Notes under the pieces: model-generated
Databases searched by the model: none
Told to the model about the DNA's origin: nothing
The model's input: only the letters and a program-made list of their open reading frames with translations
Part shown: positions 1,512 to 58,732 of the stretch, one piece after another
Layout of the letters: every line of letters starts with the position of its first letter
Position numbering within the stretch: the first letter of the stretch is position 1
Virus record (IMG/VR): IMGVR_UViG_3300031787_007614
Span: 124,001 to 188,000 of that record
DNA length: 64,000 bases
Reading direction: 5' to 3' (one strand)
Program-made: the position numbers and the translations under genes

Positions 1512-3092
1512 ATGCGTGATCTACTCAATTTACTCGACAACATACTGACTGAAGAAGTCAACGCTCAATTTGCCCCTGAACTTGAAGGCATGAAAGACGT
1601 GATTTCTAGAAGAATCAAGGATCTTCCAGACGACCCTGCTACTGCAAAAGCTCTTAAAGAAATTGAAGATCTGCTGTCGCATATTTCACATGGTGGAAGA
1701 ATGGGATCAATCAGTAAAGAAATTGAAGCTGTGCAAGATCAAGCTGTGCAAGATGCTAAAAAAGTTCTGGCAAGACTAGCAATGAACATCATGGAAGAAG
1801 TTGGTGCCACGCCGTTGCAACGTGCTGATTTTTTCAATACCTGGAAAAGCGATCGGTTGGTCAACACCCAGGCCCTGCTGAGCAATGAAAAAGTTGACTT
1901 TCCTGTGGTATTCACTGGTTATACTGAAAATCCAGTCACAAAAGAATTTGTTGACGAAGTTATGATGATCCAGGAATTAGGCATGGGACGAGGCGAATTT
2001 GGATTGAACGTACTGAGCAAAAGTATTACTGTGGCAGGCAAAAGTTCAAAACAAGACAATGACGAGGACAGCGGATCTAAAAAGGGTGACTTACAAATCA
2101 AGTCAGGTGGTAAAGTTTACCAAGTAGAATTAAAAACTGAAATGGGTGGTGCTGCCAGATTTGGAGATCAAGAAGTTAGGCCAGCAGAAGGATTTGAAGC
2201 ATCCGCAGTGACGTTGAATAATTTTGTGAAATCTCACAAGGCATACAAAAATCTCAAACGCAAATTGTCCGGCAGCGGCATGAATTTGAACCAGGCCATA
2301 GACTTTAACAAACTTCTTTCTCCAGCAGACAGTGATAAATTCCTGGCACTGACTCAACGGTGTATATCTCTCATATTTGGCAATATCAAAGGCAGTAGAA
2401 AAGAGTATGCCACAAGATTGAAAAAAAATATAAATGGCATTATGACAGCTATCGAAACTGGCGACAGCGGATCGGCTGCACAACAATGGAGTCAGGCCAG
2501 TTTCAATTATTACATGAGCAAAAAAGAAGACGACGGCGTGCTCTATCTTAACTTGAACAGCAAAGTATTCATATACTACAATGATGCAGAACAATTACTG
2601 GCACAAGGACTGAGATTCCACGCCAGTACTCCATACATTAGTGCCACAAAAGATCCTGTTAGATCAGTGTATCCACAGATTGGAGTTCAACAAACATCAT
2701 TTGGTGGTGACGCGGCTCGACAAGGATTGACACAGTTGTCCAAAGGAAAAAATCCTATGGCAGCTTCAACATTCAATTCTGCGTTGACTGATTGGGTCAT
2801 GACATTGGCAGGCAGACGTGGCATCAACAATCAAAAGTTAATAGCGCAAATTGCCAAGTCAACCTTGAACATGATAGCTAACAAAACACCAAAAGAGCAA
2901 ATTATTCCTGCACTAGAACGCCAATTTCCACAGTTGGTTCCAAGAGGGGCCGTGCAGCCAGTGGCACCTGCTGTGGCACCTGCTGTGGCGCCTGTTGGTA
3001 GACTCACAGGTCCGGGCGTGAAAACAGCTAGAAACCCAGCACAACCTCAGGTGACTGCTGAAGTGTTGGGCAGAGAACGCAGACGTAATTAA
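1512..3092 (+). CDS. 526-aa protein with a possible PD-(D/E)XK nuclease-like motif
   Basis: GDLQI...VELK motif preceded by GMGRGEFG; Pro/Ala/Val low-complexity tail. Confidence 0.55.
2961..2996 (+). repeat. 12-bp tandem repeat x3 (VAPA linker)
   Basis: gtggcacctgct gtggcacctgct gtggcgcctgtt. Confidence 0.85.
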
Positions 3093-3714: not shown

Positions 3715-4554
3715 TTATTGCAGGGTAATTTGTCCAACCACTGCATTAGGCTTGGCCAATGCTTCTGCTCGTTTGCGCTTGTATTCCTCATTGTCCACGT
3801 CCAGTAATTTTAGTTCACCTTGTGTGGTGCTTACTACACTAGGAGCCGGTTTTGGTTCCGTTTCCACTTTTACAGGTTCAATTCGACTTTGCGGAACCAA
3901 GCTACGTTCAAGATTGGCATCAGTATCTTGCTGAGTTTTGCGCTCAACTGCTTCGTTACGATCCATGTTTTGTTCAGCGGCCCGACTGCGGATTTCAAGT
4001 TCGCGTGTCAACTGAGTTTGTTCTCGTCGAGTTTGAATTGTGTTTGCGGCTCCAAGGGGCAGACGCAACAACACATAGACCTTGTAGTACTGCCCGTCAT
4101 GGGTGGCTTGACTGTCTACCCGTTGAGCTCCACTCAACTCACCATTGGCATTCTTGCGAGTGACCTGCTGGAAGTTTTCAACCAGAGCTTGGCCACGATC
4201 AGATCTAAAGTTATTGGTCTGTGTGGTAATACGAGCATACATCTGCTCAATCAACTTGCGTTCAGCTGCCATACGAGCTTTGTCGTAGGCCATTTGTTCG
4301 TCTGTGCTGACTGCTGTACCAGCCGCAAAGGTCATCTCTGCGGTATCTTCAGGCAGGCGTACAAACCATTCTGGCGCACGGGGTATCACACGCTGAGGCT
4401 GGGCTGGCATGGCATACGGATGTACCGGGGCTTGATACACTTGTGGTGCTGGTTGTGCTACCACCTGTGGCACGGGCACTTCGGCTTTTTGAGCACTGGC
4501 ACAAGCCACAAGACCGGCACTGATTGCCACAACAGAAAGTTTAACGAGTTTCAT
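3715..4554 (-). CDS. Lipoprotein (LPP20-like) with coiled-coil C-terminus
   Basis: Signal peptide and lipobox GLVAC; AAAGG SD before MKLVKL. Confidence 0.75.
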   Translation of the reverse strand: MKLVKLSVVAISAGLVACASAQKAEVPVPQVVAQPAPQVYQAPVHPYAMPAQPQRVIPRAPEWFVRLPEDTAEMTFAAGTAVSTDEQMAYDKARMAAERKLIEQMYARITTQTNNFRSDRGQALVENFQQVTRKNANGELSGAQRVDSQATHDGQYYKVYVLLRLPLGAANTIQTRREQTQLTRELEIRSRAAEQNMDRNEAVERKTQQDTDANLERSLVPQSRIEPVKVETEPKPAPSVVSTTQGELKLLDVDNEEYKRKRAEALAKPNAVVGQITLQ

Positions 4555-4586
4555 ACACACCTTTCAGGTTAGTTAACGGATAAAGC

Positions 4587-4615
4587 ATTGTAGCAGATTG
4601 ATTAAAATTTGTCAA
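4587..4615 (-). promoter_or_regulatory. sigma70-type promoter TTGACA-17-TACAAT
   Basis: -35 at 4615-4610, -10 at 4592-4587. Confidence 0.8.
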
Positions 4616-5162
4616 CCACTATCCACTTTGCATCTTGCATTTGGCAAATGATTCCTTGTACCACAGCAATGTCTTGTGCTTGGAATTCAGTATCCAAAAA
4701 CCAACGGCACCGAGCGCCGTTGTGCCAAAACTCTCTATTGCGGTCTGGATGCGGTCTAAACTGGCTTACCAGGCCCACTGTGCCCACTGTGGTCTTTCGA
4801 ATTGTTTGGTGTTCGGGTCTATCCGAACACACCACAACGGATTCTGTAGCTACAGACGTTTGTCCGCTTCGACTTTGCACTTCTGCTTCTGCTCGAGTTA
4901 GTGCAATATTGCATGCTGACTGTTCGGATTGAGAAAGATCAAAAGACTGGTCACCGTGAGCAGTAAGCCACTGGTTTCCAATCCTTGCACGGAAACTCAC
5001 AATGCATCGTTTCTTTCCATTAATTTCTGGAGTTACAGTCTGTGTCAACGCAGATCTCTCAAGTATCTGCGCACGACCATTAGTGGCTGTTTTGCTTTGT
5101 AAAACGCATTCACCGGCTGCTACTGCCGCAGGTAACATGAGAGCAATGACTAGTTTTTTCAT
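4602..5162 (-). CDS. Secreted Cys-rich hypothetical protein
   Basis: Signal-like MKKLVIALMLPAAVAAG; ATGA overlap with the upstream gene; six Cys in the mature region. Confidence 0.75.
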   Translation of the reverse strand: MKKLVIALMLPAAVAAGECVLQSKTATNGRAQILERSALTQTVTPEINGKKRCIVSFRARIGNQWLTAHGDQSFDLSQSEQSACNIALTRAEAEVQSRSGQTSVATESVVVCSDRPEHQTIRKTTVGTVGLVSQFRPHPDRNREFWHNGARCRWFLDTEFQAQDIAVVQGIICQMQDAKWIVVDKF

Positions 5163-5515
5163 GAGCAGTGTTTTAAATGTTGCAGATTCCAATTTATCTG
5201 TTTGTTTATGGCACCAGATGCAATTTCTTGTCTGCGTTGATAGCCGTCTGGGTCAGTTATTTGTGTCCAAAAATTGCCAATGTTTCCTAGTCCAGCAAAC
5301 AGCATCTCATCTTCTGATTGCCTCATGCTTTGCAACATCGCAATCTGTTGTTCTTTGATACGACAGTTGGGCTGGAAAAAATTTAGATCACGCTCGGACA
5401 TGGGCATGCGACTGACATTGGTAACGGCGCACCCACTACACAGGCTGACAATTGTAACGCAGAGTCCAAAGACGGTGGCGAATTTGCGATCGCTGACGTG
5501 CATAATCTTGCTCAC
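5159..5515 (-). CDS. Putative lipoprotein
   Basis: Hydrophobic stretch ending LCSGC. Confidence 0.7.
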   Translation of the reverse strand: MSKIMHVSDRKFATVFGLCVTIVSLCSGCAVTNVSRMPMSERDLNFFQPNCRIKEQQIAMLQSMRQSEDEMLFAGLGNIGNFWTQITDPDGYQRRQEIASGAINKQINWNLQHLKHCS

Positions 5516-55926: not shown

Positions 55927-55955
55927 AGTATAGCAGATCAGCCGGGCTAAATCAA
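55927..55955 (-). promoter_or_regulatory. sigma70 promoter TTGATT-17-TATACT (leaderless primase)
   Basis: The -35 contains the upstream TGA; ATG 6 nt after the -10. Confidence 0.75.
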
Positions 55956-57025
55956 CGATATTGGAGATTGTCAATATATCCAGTGGTAATCATTACCGTG
56001 GCCTGTTGTGTGCCTTGGTATTGAATTGGCAAGTAACCTGAACCGCCATTGGTCACTACAATGGTTGCAATTTGGCCGTCGGCCCCAATGGTGGCTATAG
56101 CTTCTGCGCCAGATCCATTTCCCAAGATTTGAACTTTGGGTGCAGCCACATAATTCTTGCCAGCATTGCTCAAGCTGATTCCTGTGACCACACCCTCAGG
56201 TGAAACCTGTGCTGTTGCTTGCCCGCCAAATCCTTGACTGTTGTTAAAAGCTGCTCGAATCAAGGGATAAAATCCTACCACGTTGAAATACTGTGTGGAA
56301 GTTTCATCAAAAAAGCTATAACTGTCAGTTACATTGTACCAGATAGATTCGTAATCTTGTGCGGCCTGAAATTTCACAGTGCCTGTAAAGTGATCCAGAT
56401 CCATCTTGACTGTTGTCAAACTCTGATGAGATGTGTCAATAAAACTGCTGTAGAATTCAGTAAGTTGCGTGGTATTTACTGGAGGAGGTGTTAGCGCCCA
56501 GTCGGGATAGTTGGTCGGTCCGGGTGTTAGTTGTTGTGCTTTGCCATAAATTGTGGGAATAGTGAGTTCATGACTGGGCACAAACTGCGGTAGCACAGAA
56601 TCCACAATGTTACAGTCACCACGTGCTTGGCTGTTGGCGTCCACATACACTGCTTGTATGTAATCACCAGAAGTGCGCTGTATTGAATAACTAGCTGGTT
56701 GTGCAACTAGATTAATGGTGTCTTCGATGTCCAGCACCACTTTTACTCGTCCTAGTGAATTGCTAAGACTTGTCATGTCTTTTTCCACCAGTACTCTGTC
56801 TCCGTTTTGGCTCATCAAACGAAACACAAATGCAGAGCCAGTGATGTTTACCGGTTTCTGTTCTTGATTGATAAATTCAAAGAGTAGAACATTATCTACA
56901 CCTTTGTTTACAGTTAATTGTTTTGCATACACTGGGTCGTACCTCGCTGTGAAATATCCACCACTGGTGTCAACTAACAAGACTTTGGTAATTTGCTGGT
57001 ATAAGTAAACGGTGGTTGAATACAT
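55952..57025 (-). CDS. Putative baseplate/structural protein
   Basis: BppU-like N-terminus; C-terminal beta repeats (VTGISLSNAGKNY..P, IVVTNGGSGY). Confidence 0.6.
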   Translation of the reverse strand: MYSTTVYLYQQITKVLLVDTSGGYFTARYDPVYAKQLTVNKGVDNVLLFEFINQEQKPVNITGSAFVFRLMSQNGDRVLVEKDMTSLSNSLGRVKVVLDIEDTINLVAQPASYSIQRTSGDYIQAVYVDANSQARGDCNIVDSVLPQFVPSHELTIPTIYGKAQQLTPGPTNYPDWALTPPPVNTTQLTEFYSSFIDTSHQSLTTVKMDLDHFTGTVKFQAAQDYESIWYNVTDSYSFFDETSTQYFNVVGFYPLIRAAFNNSQGFGGQATAQVSPEGVVTGISLSNAGKNYVAAPKVQILGNGSGAEAIATIGADGQIATIVVTNGGSGYLPIQYQGTQQATVMITTGYIDNLQYR

Positions 57026-57045
57026 AGGATCCTCGAACAATATTT

Positions 57046-57423
57046 ATGGGCAATACAATCTTCGATAAGCTGGCAGAAAAATACCCGTTTATTACTCTTT
57101 GCAGTTATGCAAACGCAGAATACGTGGGCATTATACAAAACAGAGATGACAGCGTGACTACCATCTACGACTTTGGATCTGTAGTTGACCAACAAGACAA
57201 AATGTTGTTTTTAGAACTGGCCAATCAGTGGTGGTGGGAAAGCAATAGATCCATCCCCATCAACATATTCCTTCGCCAAGATTGGGACAAATTTAGATTT
57301 ACGTTGCGCACATTTTCCAACAAAGATCTTGAAGTTTTACACGGTCCAGTGTGCAGTTTGATGGACATTGCTCGCAAGAAAAGCAAGCGAAAATCAATCA
57401 CACTTGTGCGGCGTCTTGATTGA
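57046..57423 (+). CDS. Conserved hypothetical protein
   Basis: WWWESNRSIPINIFL. Confidence 0.75.
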   Translation: MGNTIFDKLAEKYPFITLCSYANAEYVGIIQNRDDSVTTIYDFGSVVDQQDKMLFLELANQWWWESNRSIPINIFLRQDWDKFRFTLRTFSNKDLEVLHGPVCSLMDIARKKSKRKSITLVRRLD

Positions 57424-57976
57424 GTAGATTCATGTGTAGTGCGACCAAAGCCGCGTAACTTATACTGTGCGACTTTTTGAATGTGTAACCTTTAGAATCA
57501 TCTCCGTTCCACACTTCGGCAAACACTTCTGTCCACGGGCGATTTTGTAAGTGTGCTTTGCCCGGGCGAATAACTGAGATAAACGCTGCCATTCTGGGTA
57601 TTGAATCTGGCCGCATTGACAGCATCAAGTCTGTGTAATTGCCCACATGAACCAACTGACTAGCCCAAGCAGTATCAGTCCACAGTCTCTGCCATGGTGG
57701 CACGGCTGCCAACATTTCAGCATAGTGTGCAGGGTCACGAATCAACTGATACACACTCATGTTCAACAGATCTATCTTGAAGTATCCACGCTGTTCTGCT
57801 GACTCATAGTCTATGGCTGCACAGCCATTGGGTATGTCTCTAGGAATGTCTGTGACATAGATGCCTGAATTGTGTTTACGCACTTGACCTTGATGCAGTT
57901 GCCGTGCGGCAGTGTGCTGGATTAATTTCAGCACAGCCGTTCTATCCGGCACATCAATGTCAATGTCTGCGCTCAT
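57398..57976 (-). CDS. Miniature DnaE (family C polymerase) catalytic-core protein
   Basis: DIDID, HNSG, GYFKIDLL, RPDS..IRPG, YTFKKSHSISYA are colinear with DnaE. Confidence 0.8.
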   Translation of the reverse strand: MSADIDIDVPDRTAVLKLIQHTAARQLHQGQVRKHNSGIYVTDIPRDIPNGCAAIDYESAEQRGYFKIDLLNMSVYQLIRDPAHYAEMLAAVPPWQRLWTDTAWASQLVHVGNYTDLMLSMRPDSIPRMAAFISVIRPGKAHLQNRPWTEVFAEVWNGDDSKGYTFKKSHSISYAALVALHMNLLNQDAAQV

Positions 57977-58376
57977 AAGTTTCCAAGTATTGTACAGCAG
58001 ATTGCAGTCTTTGTAAATTGTCAGCGAAGTTTCCTAGCCCTAAATTGCATTTATGACACAACCAATTTCTAAATTCGCCAGTAATATGATCATGGTCTGC
58101 ACACCATACTGTTTTCTTTTTTACACTGTATCCGTGTGCTTCTTCTTCATTGCGATTGCATATAGGACATCGATAATTTAATGGCACTGCCGGAGCTGTT
58201 TTTTTTAATTTTGCAACCAATTTACTTTGAGCTCTTGCGCATTCTTTGCATTCATATCTTCTATATTTGGCACCGCCATCAAATCCAAAACATCCAATAG
58301 GTTTTTCGTTACGGCACATCCCACAAATTTTTGTTTGTGTGTTAGCACCTTCAAATAACTTTTGAAAATTATTCAC
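57960..58376 (-). CDS. Endonuclease VII-family (likely free-standing homing) endonuclease
   Basis: CPIC, DHDH.TG, LCHKCNLGLG; N-terminal CGMC..CKEC. Confidence 0.88.
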   Translation of the reverse strand: MNNFQKLFEGANTQTKICGMCRNEKPIGCFGFDGGAKYRRYECKECARAQSKLVAKLKKTAPAVPLNYRCPICNRNEEEAHGYSVKKKTVWCADHDHITGEFRNWLCHKCNLGLGNFADNLQRLQSAVQYLETYERRH

Positions 58377-58732
58377 TTGCTGTCAGTATCGCAAAGTGCA
58401 GTCACCACCTGCAGTTTTTCTTTGGCCAGTTGCACTGCTGCCAATGCATCTGCCACTGTGGGATGTTGTGCTGCCAGGTGCGCAATGCGCCATTCTTCAT
58501 CACGCTTGGCTCGTGCCCAATCTAACAGGGTTTCAGCGTCTGTTGTGAGAGTGATCATAGGATGTGCCGAGTGAATCTGCTGCCACGAATTGCCATCGTT
58601 TACCTCCATACAGTTCATGCCGGAGTTCCATCTCAACATGCCTGCGCCGCTTGCACCTGGACTGATGTATGGATTGGTGAACGTGCCGCCCGACACTTGA
58701 ATGTATTTGCTGCCGCTAATAGATCTAATCAT
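58373..58732 (-). CDS. Hypothetical protein
   Basis: Coupled ORF. Confidence 0.75.
   Translation of the reverse strand: MIRSISGSKYIQVSGGTFTNPYISPGASGAGMLRWNSGMNCMEVNDGNSWQQIHSAHPMITLTTDAETLLDWARAKRDEEWRIAHLAAQHPTVADALAAVQLAKEKLQVVTALCDTDSK

What the first reader, a model, noticed from the sequence alone, without database searches (positions are those of the whole stretch)
57398..57976. A 192-aa minimal family-C DNA polymerase retaining all three catalytic Asps
Seen: DIDID (cf. E. coli DnaE PDFDVD, D401/D403), HNSG (HAGG), FKIDLL (KFDFLG, D555), IRPG and YTFKKSHS (YGFNKSHS) lie in order in under 200 aa. PHP, most of the thumb/fingers, HhH and OB are absent. The gene is intact with no flanking remnants and sits in the primase/helicase/clamp-loader region. 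Inference: a stripped-down nucleotidyltransferase with a new role (primer extension, end tailing, gap filling, or decoy for host Pol III partners).
Basis: partly seen in the sequence, partly recalled or inferred. Interest (0 to 1): 0.78.

Follow-up and report, generated by a model that had tools for sequence, protein, structure and literature searches.

The report
Half of a split mini-polymerase
This 192-residue gene of a freshwater jumbo phage is the metal-binding half of a stripped-down bacterial-type DNA polymerase whose other half is encoded 97 kb away; the arrangement was already described by comparative genomics in 2021 and has never been tested at the bench.

Summary
The ORF at 57398-57976 (minus strand, 192 aa) is real, intact and homologous to the palm and fingers of family-C polymerases. 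Its AlphaFold model (pLDDT 95.6) superposes on E. coli DnaE 399-781 and Taq 460-841 (Z 8.4-9.8). The aspartates D4/D6/D8 and D69 align with E. coli D401/D403/D405 and D555 and are conserved.

It is not a complete stand-alone enzyme. It lacks the nucleotide-binding GRGS helix. That helix lies in a second 172-aa gene, 97 kb away beside the clamp loader, which ends exactly where this protein begins. Both genes co-occur in every sufficiently complete relative examined. Both are under strong purifying selection (dN/dS about 0.03-0.13). Three rare 375-376-aa proteins fuse the two halves and align with DnaE without a break across the junction.

The genome also encodes a T4-type family-B polymerase and no other Pol III domain. 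This is the "split minimal Pol III alpha" of group 2.2 jumbo phages described by Iyer et al. 2021 (PMC7824862). It is a new member of a known, untested kind.

The parts
57398..57976 (-). Gene for the C-terminal half ('piece B', 192 aa) of the split minimal Pol III alpha. It carries the metal-binding aspartates and a remnant of the fingers.
   Evidence: ORF; phrog_11778 E 1.5e-51 over the full length; profile against PDB DnaE E 4e-6; AF2 pLDDT 95.6; VIA-align to E. coli DnaE 399-781 at Z 8.4 and Taq 460-841 at Z 9.8; dN/dS 0.055-0.127 against the closest relatives.
57953..57967 (-). Codons 4-8, D-I-D-I-D. D4/D6 are equivalent to E. coli catalytic D401/D403, and D8 to D405.
   Evidence: Each is conserved in at least 90% of 84 homologs at 25-60% identity. 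The residue alignment comes through the fused homolog. The segment forms strand E5-9 in the model.
57863..57874 (-). Codons 35-38, H-N-S-G, in a beta-hairpin of the palm.
   Evidence: H35 and G38 are at least 90% conserved and lie on strand E31-40. Equivalence to E. coli 'HAGG' was not tested at residue level.
57770..57778 (-). Codons 67-69, K-I-D. K67/D69 are equivalent to E. coli K553/D555, the third catalytic aspartate.
   Evidence: Both columns are invariant in 84 homologs. HMMER alignment to 2HNH.
57560..57568 (-). Codons 137-139, R-P-G, equivalent to E. coli R639-P640-G641 in the fingers.
   Evidence: P138 is invariant and R137 at least 90% conserved. Alignment.
57467..57475 (-). Codons 168-170, K-S-H, equivalent to E. 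coli K758-S759-H760 in the fingers.
   Evidence: H170 and K167 are at least 90% conserved. Alignment.
57046..57423 (+). Conserved convergent neighbour (125 aa, phrog_11637, function unknown) whose 3' end overlaps piece B by 26 nt. It is a candidate associate, and membership is unproven.
   Evidence: It lies adjacent and convergent in 78 of 80 related loci, in PA5oct and Phosso, next to the fused gene, and in 89 cultured jumbo phages. It has no Pfam or PDB relative.

Best explanation
Identity (shown). The ORF encodes the C-terminal half of a two-gene, minimal family-C (Pol III alpha-type) nucleotidyltransferase typical of 'group 2.2' jumbo phages such as Rak2, PA5oct and Atu_ph07. This half supplies the strands bearing the three catalytic aspartates, the lysine next to the third aspartate, and a shortened fingers segment with the RPG and KSH motifs. 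The N-terminal half ('piece A', 172 aa, G000:C1:83753-84271, minus strand, 97 kb away beside the clamp loader) supplies the helices and the GRGS nucleotide-binding loop.

Assembly (inferred). The two polypeptides associate non-covalently into one Pol-beta-like palm, with no intein and no read-through. The assembled enzyme of about 364 aa lacks PHP, thumb, clamp-binding, HhH, OB and tau-binding parts. It acts as an accessory, low-processivity DNA polymerase beside the phage's T4-type family-B replicase. Short-patch synthesis, meaning gap filling, repair or primer-proximal synthesis, is the most likely role.

Confidence by step. I put identity and the two-part nature at about 0.9, templated DNA synthesis at about 0.55, and the specific short-patch role at about 0.25.
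For: The partner half exists. PF07733 hits a 172-aa ORF above the cut-off, and phrog_11127 matches at E 2e-37. Its profile aligns to E. coli DnaE 323-392 and ends at ...FERFL, while piece B starts at the DFDVD equivalent.

Fused forms exist. Three clusters of 375-376 aa join an A-like half, a 10-aa linker and a B-like half. They hit both PHROGs, and PF07733 positions 14-121 contiguously at 58.6 bits. They align with E. coli 320-417 without a break. The AF2 model of one (pLDDT 84, residues 80-376 confident) matches DnaE and PolC at Z 15-21. Generic Pol-beta-fold transferases match across the junction, residues about 105-275. In the tree the fused clade (100/100) is nested inside split forms, so the fusion is secondary.

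The halves co-occur. The same jumbo-phage set carries both. All 7 IMG/VR records that carry A and are at least 81% complete have exactly one B, and across the 10 records holding both genes the two lie 44-108 kb apart.

Both are under selection. dN/dS is 0.055-0.127 for B and 0.026-0.040 for A against the closest relatives, with no stop codon in 160 loci. Lengths are fixed at 192 and 172 aa. The catalytic columns are invariant or at least 90% conserved.

Genome context fits. A family-B polymerase is present. No PHP, fingers or HHH_6 model matches anywhere, and phrog_405 finds only A and B.

Literature. Iyer et al. 2021 describe exactly this arrangement.
Against: No biochemical or genetic data exist for any member, and none turned up in the literature searches. 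Physical association of A and B is inferred from complementarity, co-occurrence and the fused homolog, and was not modelled as a complex here. The fused model rests on an imperfect alignment, in which the last 22 residues of the A fragments were misplaced. Without a thumb or clamp contact it is unclear how the enzyme would hold primer-template DNA. RNA-library contigs match the gene, but DNA carry-over is not excluded.
Confidence: 0.8

Rival explanations
1. Stand-alone reading. The 192-aa protein by itself is a complete minimal polymerase or nucleotidyltransferase.
For: It folds confidently on its own in silico and keeps all three catalytic aspartates plus K67, RPG and KSH.
Against: It lacks the hG[GS] nucleotide-binding loop and the preceding helices that define Pol-beta-fold transferases (my own knowledge of the fold). 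These sit in piece A. A co-occurs with B in all sufficiently complete relatives examined. Natural fusions join the two.
Confidence: 0.05
2. The assembled A+B enzyme is a nucleotidyltransferase but not a templated DNA polymerase. It might add template-independent tails, synthesise nucleotide signals, or modify DNA or RNA ends.
For: Thumb, clamp-binding and most of the fingers are missing. After DnaE and PolC, the next structural neighbours of the core are CCA-adding enzymes, MenT toxins and terminal uridylyltransferases. A complete family-B replicase is already present.
Against: The retained fingers motifs (RPG, KSH) are specific to family-C polymerases and strongly conserved. Similarity to DnaE (Z 15-21) far exceeds that to other transferases (Z at most 4.2). 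Both genes lie in conserved replisome clusters, with primase and helicase on one side and the clamp loader on the other.
Confidence: 0.12
3. The two ORFs are decaying remnants of a once full-length phage dnaE that was broken by rearrangement.
For: The pieces are short, far apart and in permuted order, with B upstream of A on the same strand.
Against: dN/dS is 0.03-0.13, with no stop codons in 160 loci. Lengths are constant across thousands of clusters. The split point is identical from PA5oct to Atu_ph07. The catalytic residues are invariant.
Confidence: 0.01
4. It is a non-catalytic decoy or regulator that titrates host Pol III partners.
For: None directly.
Against: The known partner-binding parts of DnaE are absent, namely the clamp motif, the tau-binding C-terminus and the PHP/epsilon site (domain assignments from my own knowledge). 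The metal ligands and nucleotide-contact residues would not need to stay invariant in a decoy.
Confidence: 0.03

Closest known systems
Split minimal DNA Pol III alpha of group 2.2 jumbo phages (Iyer, Anantharaman, Krishnan, Burroughs & Aravind 2021, Viruses 13:63, PMC7824862; PHROG families 11127 and 11778)
   Same: There are two distantly encoded proteins, one for the N-terminal NTP-binding half and one for the C-terminal Mg2+- and template-binding half. A family-B polymerase accompanies them and no other Pol III domain is present. The same phage lineages carry them (Atu_ph07, PA5oct, Rak2-like).
   Different: Nothing essential differs. This is an uncultured 364-kb freshwater member, only 34-41% identical to cultured examples. 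Added here are rare secondarily fused forms, selection measurements, the conserved placement of each half beside a different replisome module, and the conserved convergent phrog_11637 neighbour.
Bacterial replicative DnaE / PolC (family C), e.g. E. coli 2HNH, Taq 3E0D, G. kaustophilus PolC 3F2B
   Same: They share the Pol-beta-like palm with GRGS, the DxD and third Asp, the lysine before the third Asp, and the RPG and KSH fingers motifs. The structural match is Z 8-10 for piece B and Z 15-21 for the fused homolog.
   Different: The phage version totals about 364 aa against about 1160. It has no PHP, thumb, clamp-binding, HhH, OB or tau-binding parts. About 89 and 88 residues are removed at the thumb and mid-fingers positions. 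The palm itself is divided between two polypeptides.
Intein-split DnaE of cyanobacteria (my own knowledge: Synechocystis dnaE-n/dnaE-c, joined by protein trans-splicing)
   Same: A family-C polymerase is encoded by two distant genes.
   Different: There the split lies far downstream in a full-length enzyme and is healed by a split intein. Here piece A ends and piece B begins with polymerase residues and leaves no room for intein halves, and the fused homolog needs only a 10-aa linker.
African swine fever virus Pol X (described in PMC11646218 as a minimal PolX with only the nucleotidyltransferase fold and fingers)
   Same: It is a drastically reduced Pol-beta-fold DNA polymerase in a large DNA virus that also has a family-B replicase. 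It is an analogy for a repair or gap-filling role.
   Different: It belongs to a different family (X, not C), is a single chain, and has been characterised experimentally.
Full-length phage DnaE (group 3.2 jumbo phages, phrog_405)
   Same: The palm and fingers are homologous (phrog_405 E 1e-5 for B and 9e-4 for A).
   Different: Those are host-like, single-chain, PHP-bearing replicases.

Membership tests
Split minimal Pol III alpha of group 2.2 jumbo phages (Iyer et al. 2021) | The C-terminal unit has the Mg2+-binding aspartates and a template-binding remnant, as a separate protein of about 190 aa. | tested here: met
   phrog_11778 E 1.5e-51 covering positions 7-194 of 197; conserved D4/D6/D8/D69; structural match to DnaE 399-781.
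Split minimal Pol III alpha of group 2.2 jumbo phages (Iyer et al. 2021) | A separate N-terminal NTP-binding unit is encoded at a distant locus of the same genome. | tested here: met
   A 172-aa ORF at G000:C1:83753-84271, 97 kb away; PF07733 at 26.8 bits against a 23.9 cut-off; phrog_11127 E 2e-37; invariant GRGSS.
Split minimal Pol III alpha of group 2.2 jumbo phages (Iyer et al. 2021) | It is accompanied by a family-B polymerase and T4-type replisome genes, with no other Pol III domains. | tested here: met
   PF00136 E 1e-30 in a 907-aa frame; DnaB helicase, primase and clamp loader present; no PHP, fingers model or HHH_6.
Split minimal Pol III alpha of group 2.2 jumbo phages (Iyer et al. 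2021) | The two units reconstitute one active enzyme. | not testable with these tools
   Supported only indirectly, by fused homologs, co-occurrence and the model of the fused form. No complex prediction or assay was available.
Family C DNA polymerase catalytic subunit (DnaE/PolC) | A Pol-beta-like palm with GS loop, DxD and third Asp in one chain. | tested here: not met
   Piece B has DxD and the third Asp but no GS loop. The loop is in piece A. Only the pair or the fused homolog has the full set.
Family C DNA polymerase catalytic subunit (DnaE/PolC) | Pfam DNA_pol3_alpha (PF07733) at the gathering threshold. | tested here: not met
   Piece B has no Pfam hit at E up to 10. Piece A and the fused form pass.
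Family C DNA polymerase catalytic subunit (DnaE/PolC) | An N-terminal PHP domain. | tested here: not met
   PF02811 is absent from the whole genome while all 14 control genomes ring.
Family C DNA polymerase catalytic subunit (DnaE/PolC) | Thumb, complete fingers, clamp-binding/HhH and OB domains. | tested here: not met
   192 residues span E. coli 399-781. PF17657 and PF14579 are absent. The protein ends about 20 residues after KSH.
Intein-split DnaE | Split-intein halves at the C-terminus of the N-piece and the N-terminus of the C-piece. | tested here: not met
   Piece A ends ...EFLR and piece B starts MSADIDID. Both align end-to-end with the fused protein, leaving only a 10-aa linker.

The most novel reading that the evidence does not exclude
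The enzyme may have more than two pieces. The 125-aa phrog_11637 protein is encoded convergently against piece B, with overlapping 3' ends, in essentially every lineage that has the mini-polymerase, including the lineage where A and B are fused. It has a conserved tryptophan-rich motif and a basic C-terminal tail. It could be a third, DNA-holding subunit that stands in for the missing thumb or clamp contact. Placing the N-half beside the clamp loader and the C-half beside the primosome could tie assembly of the polymerase to expression of both replisome modules. Neither idea is in the 2021 description, as far as the text I could read shows.
Probability: 0.12. Interest if true: 0.6.

Novelty: new member of a known kind. 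Interest (0 to 1): 0.4.

Why it matters
A catalytic palm domain divided between two distantly encoded polypeptides, and kept that way under strong selection in thousands of environmental phage lineages, is an unusual way to build a polymerase. It is also the smallest known family-C polymerase core, which Iyer et al. proposed as a model for the ancestral enzyme. Many database records still label these genes 'hypothetical' or even 'putative membrane protein', so correct annotation has practical value. The fused natural variants found here give a ready single-chain construct for biochemistry. The finding as handed over adds no new kind of system.

Tried and rejected
Direct searches with piece B alone found nothing in Pfam, NCBIfam or PDB phmmer. 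Profiles and structure were needed.

MAFFT could not place A homologs on the N-half of the fused protein (alignments A3, A4, A8, A9). Only A7, built with trimmed A fragments, was mostly right. It was used for the fused model, with the caveat that 22 residues per A fragment were misplaced.

The pseudogene reading was rejected on selection and length data. The intein reading was rejected on end-to-end alignment.

phrog_11637 was searched in the Atlas, the PDB and Pfam without result. orf205, upstream of piece A, has no homolog in cultured phages.

The PA5oct omics paper and a 2026 jumbo-phage review do not mention the polymerase. No supplements are held for Iyer et al..

The promoter scan gave counts at chance level. 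Metatranscriptome contigs match the gene but cannot prove transcription.

Full report
1. What is there

The window holds an intact 192-aa ORF on the minus strand at 57398-57976. The window is G000:C1:124001-188000 of a 364,404-bp virus record with direct terminal repeats. At least 14 lake-water, freshwater and fungus-labelled metagenome runs hold 94-98% of the sampled words of this stretch.

They are D4-I-D6-I-D8, H35-N-S-G38, K67-I-D69, R137-P138-G139 and K168-S169-H170.

Single-sequence searches of Pfam, NCBIfam and the PDB find nothing. PHROGs places the protein full-length in phrog_11778, annotated 'DNA polymerase' (E 1.5e-51), and weakly in the DnaE-like phrog_405.

2. Is the DnaE resemblance real?

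Yes.
- A profile of 84 homologs (25-60% identical) hits only Pol III alpha chains in the PDB, at E 4e-6. It aligns K67/D69 with E. coli K553/D555, RPG with 639-641 and KSH with 758-760.
- The AlphaFold model is very confident (pLDDT 95.6, pTM 0.88).
- The top 16 Foldseek hits are all family-C polymerases.
- VIA-align superposes 184-190 of the 192 residues on E. coli DnaE 399-781 (Z 8.4), Taq 460-841 (Z 9.8) and PolC 970-1299 (Z 9.5). The next unrelated fold scores Z 3.9.
- An Atlas model of a close relative gives TM 0.76-0.79 against DnaE-type models.

Two blocks are missing relative to E. coli. About 89 residues are absent between the DxD strand and K553, which is the thumb position. About 88 are absent between RPG and KSH. 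The domain boundaries are from my own knowledge of Lamers et al. 2006.

The catalytic columns are invariant (K67, D69, P138) or at least 90% conserved (D4, D6, D8, H35, G38, R137, H170).

3. It is only half of the enzyme

A genome-wide scan with PF07733 hits a second ORF above the curated cut-off. This ORF, 'piece A', is 172 aa and lies at G000:C1:83753-84271 on the minus strand (L001:1495-2013). phrog_405 finds only these two ORFs in the genome.

Piece A carries an invariant GVGRGSS, and its profile aligns with E. coli 323-392. It ends with ...EFLR at the position of E. coli FERFL. Piece B starts at the DFDVD equivalent. The break therefore falls inside the Pol-beta-like palm, between the GS-loop helix and the first metal-binding strand.

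The two genes lie 97 kb apart on the same strand with B upstream of A, so read-through cannot join them. There is no room for intein halves.

4. Evidence that the halves belong together

(a) Fused forms. The 1.8-billion-representative search returned one 375-aa protein, and a follow-up search found two more of 376 aa. These are P0282, P0391 and P0392, from separate samples. Each consists of an A-like half, a 10-residue linker and a B-like half.
- They hit both PHROGs, and PF07733 contiguously across the junction at 58.6 bits.
- They align without a break to E. coli 320-417. This gives GRGS = R362-G363-S364 and DxDxD = D401/D403/D405.
- The AlphaFold model of P0392 (pLDDT 84; residues 80-376 confident; the linker scores low) matches DnaE and PolC at Z 15-21.
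- Generic Pol-beta-fold transferases such as CCA-adding enzymes and MenT match residues of about 105-275, which spans both halves.
- In a maximum-likelihood tree the fused clade (100/100) is nested inside well-supported clades of split forms. The fusion is therefore secondary.

(b) Co-occurrence.
- Cultured phages with B (96 records) and with A (101 records) form the same jumbo-phage set: PA5oct-like, Rak2/121Q/CBB-like, Atu_ph07, Phosso, Yersinia fHe-Yen9 and Xanthomonas phages. The genes are always tens to hundreds of kb apart.
- Of 15 IMG/VR records carrying A, all seven that are at least 81% complete carry exactly one B.
- In the ten records holding both, the genes lie 44-108 kb apart.
- The five records without B are 34-76% complete.

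(c) Selection.
- Against the nearest relatives, where dS is unsaturated at 0.47-0.78, dN/dS is 0.055-0.127 for B. For A it is 0.026-0.040.
- None of 160 loci has an internal stop.
- Lengths are fixed. 103 of 120 B clusters have exactly 192 aa, and 95 of 120 A clusters have exactly 172 aa.
- Both families are very large in metagenomes, with at least 7,929 and 6,720 clusters at 90% identity.

5. Context

The conserved order around piece B is phrog_11058 gene, orf119, B, a convergent 125-aa phrog_11637 gene, a structural-like protein, primase, then DnaB-type helicase. PA5oct and Phosso share this order.

Around piece A the order is orf205, A, a Cpn10-like gene, then the clamp loader. Seventy of the 80 related loci hold the clamp loader just downstream, and PA5oct has the same gene order. 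The clamp loader is therefore next to the partner gene, not next to the finding.

The genome has a family-B polymerase (907-aa frame, PF00136 E 1e-30). It has no PHP, HHH_6 or Pfam fingers match.

6. Comparison with what is known

Iyer et al. [quoted passage not shown] It accompanies a family-B polymerase. They suggest it might help synthesise one strand or act in repair.

The present gene meets every testable criterion of that description. I found no experimental work on it.

7. Mechanism

Shown: homology, fold, conservation of the active-site residues, the complementary partner, co-occurrence and natural fusion.

Inferred: A and B associate non-covalently into a palm of about 364 aa with a short fingers segment. 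That enzyme transfers nucleotides with two-metal chemistry.

More weakly inferred: it is a templated, low-processivity DNA polymerase that serves repair, gap filling or primer-proximal synthesis beside the PolB replicase. ASFV Pol X is an analogy for such a role.

The rivals are a non-templated transferase role (about 0.12), stand-alone activity (0.05), a decoy (0.03) and decay (0.01).

8. Verdict

This is a new, uncultured member of a known and biochemically untested kind.

The modest additions here are the secondarily fused variants, the selection measurements, the split placement beside two different replisome modules, and the strictly conserved convergent phrog_11637 neighbour.

Noticed in passing
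window 57960-58376 (-): A 138-aa endonuclease VII gene (PF02945 E 4.7e-14; phrog_2633) lies directly upstream of piece B and overlaps its ATG by 17 nt. It is absent from all 80 related loci and from an RNA-library contig that joins 57976 to 58382. It looks like a recent insertion of a free-standing, homing-type endonuclease.
   Followed up: partly
window 57046-57423 (+): A 125-aa ORF (phrog_11637, no known relatives) is convergent with piece B, and their 3' ends overlap by 26 nt. The pairing is kept in 78 of 80 loci, in PA5oct, in Phosso, next to the fused gene and in 89 cultured jumbo phages. It has a conserved WWWESNRxxPINIF motif and a basic C-terminal tail.
   Followed up: partly
L171:8259-8876 (-) = G000:C1:84258-84875: A 205-aa ORF overlaps the start of piece A by 14 nt, which suggests possible translational coupling. 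It is conserved in 68 of 80 environmental loci. It has no PHROG or Pfam hit and no match in cultured phages.
   Followed up: partly
L170:519-1649 (+) residues 1-78; L001:1495-2013 (-) residues 1-72: The N-terminal 75 or so residues of piece A and of the fused protein are poorly conserved and modelled at low confidence. The structural aligner extends the DnaE match into the PHP region (chain residues 42-48 onward). This may be a vestige of PHP, or noise.
   Followed up: no
ESM Atlas cluster listed (357 aa, viral, PF07733 + PF17657, 73 members): This may be a further, more divergent lineage of single-chain mini-DnaE proteins, beyond the three fused clusters found here.
   Followed up: no
L171:1190-2104 (-), 4193-5350 (-), 2190-2960 (+): Two radical-SAM / QueE-like genes and a PhoH-like gene lie 2-6 kb downstream of piece A. 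This hints at nucleotide or base-modification functions near the clamp-loader module.
   Followed up: no
window 55952-57040 (-): A 362-aa protein lies between piece B and the primase. Its C-terminal 70 or so residues resemble repeats in baseplate-wedge and virion structural proteins. The gene at the same position in PA5oct is annotated as a structural protein found in virions by mass spectrometry. A structural gene thus sits inside a replication cluster.
   Followed up: no
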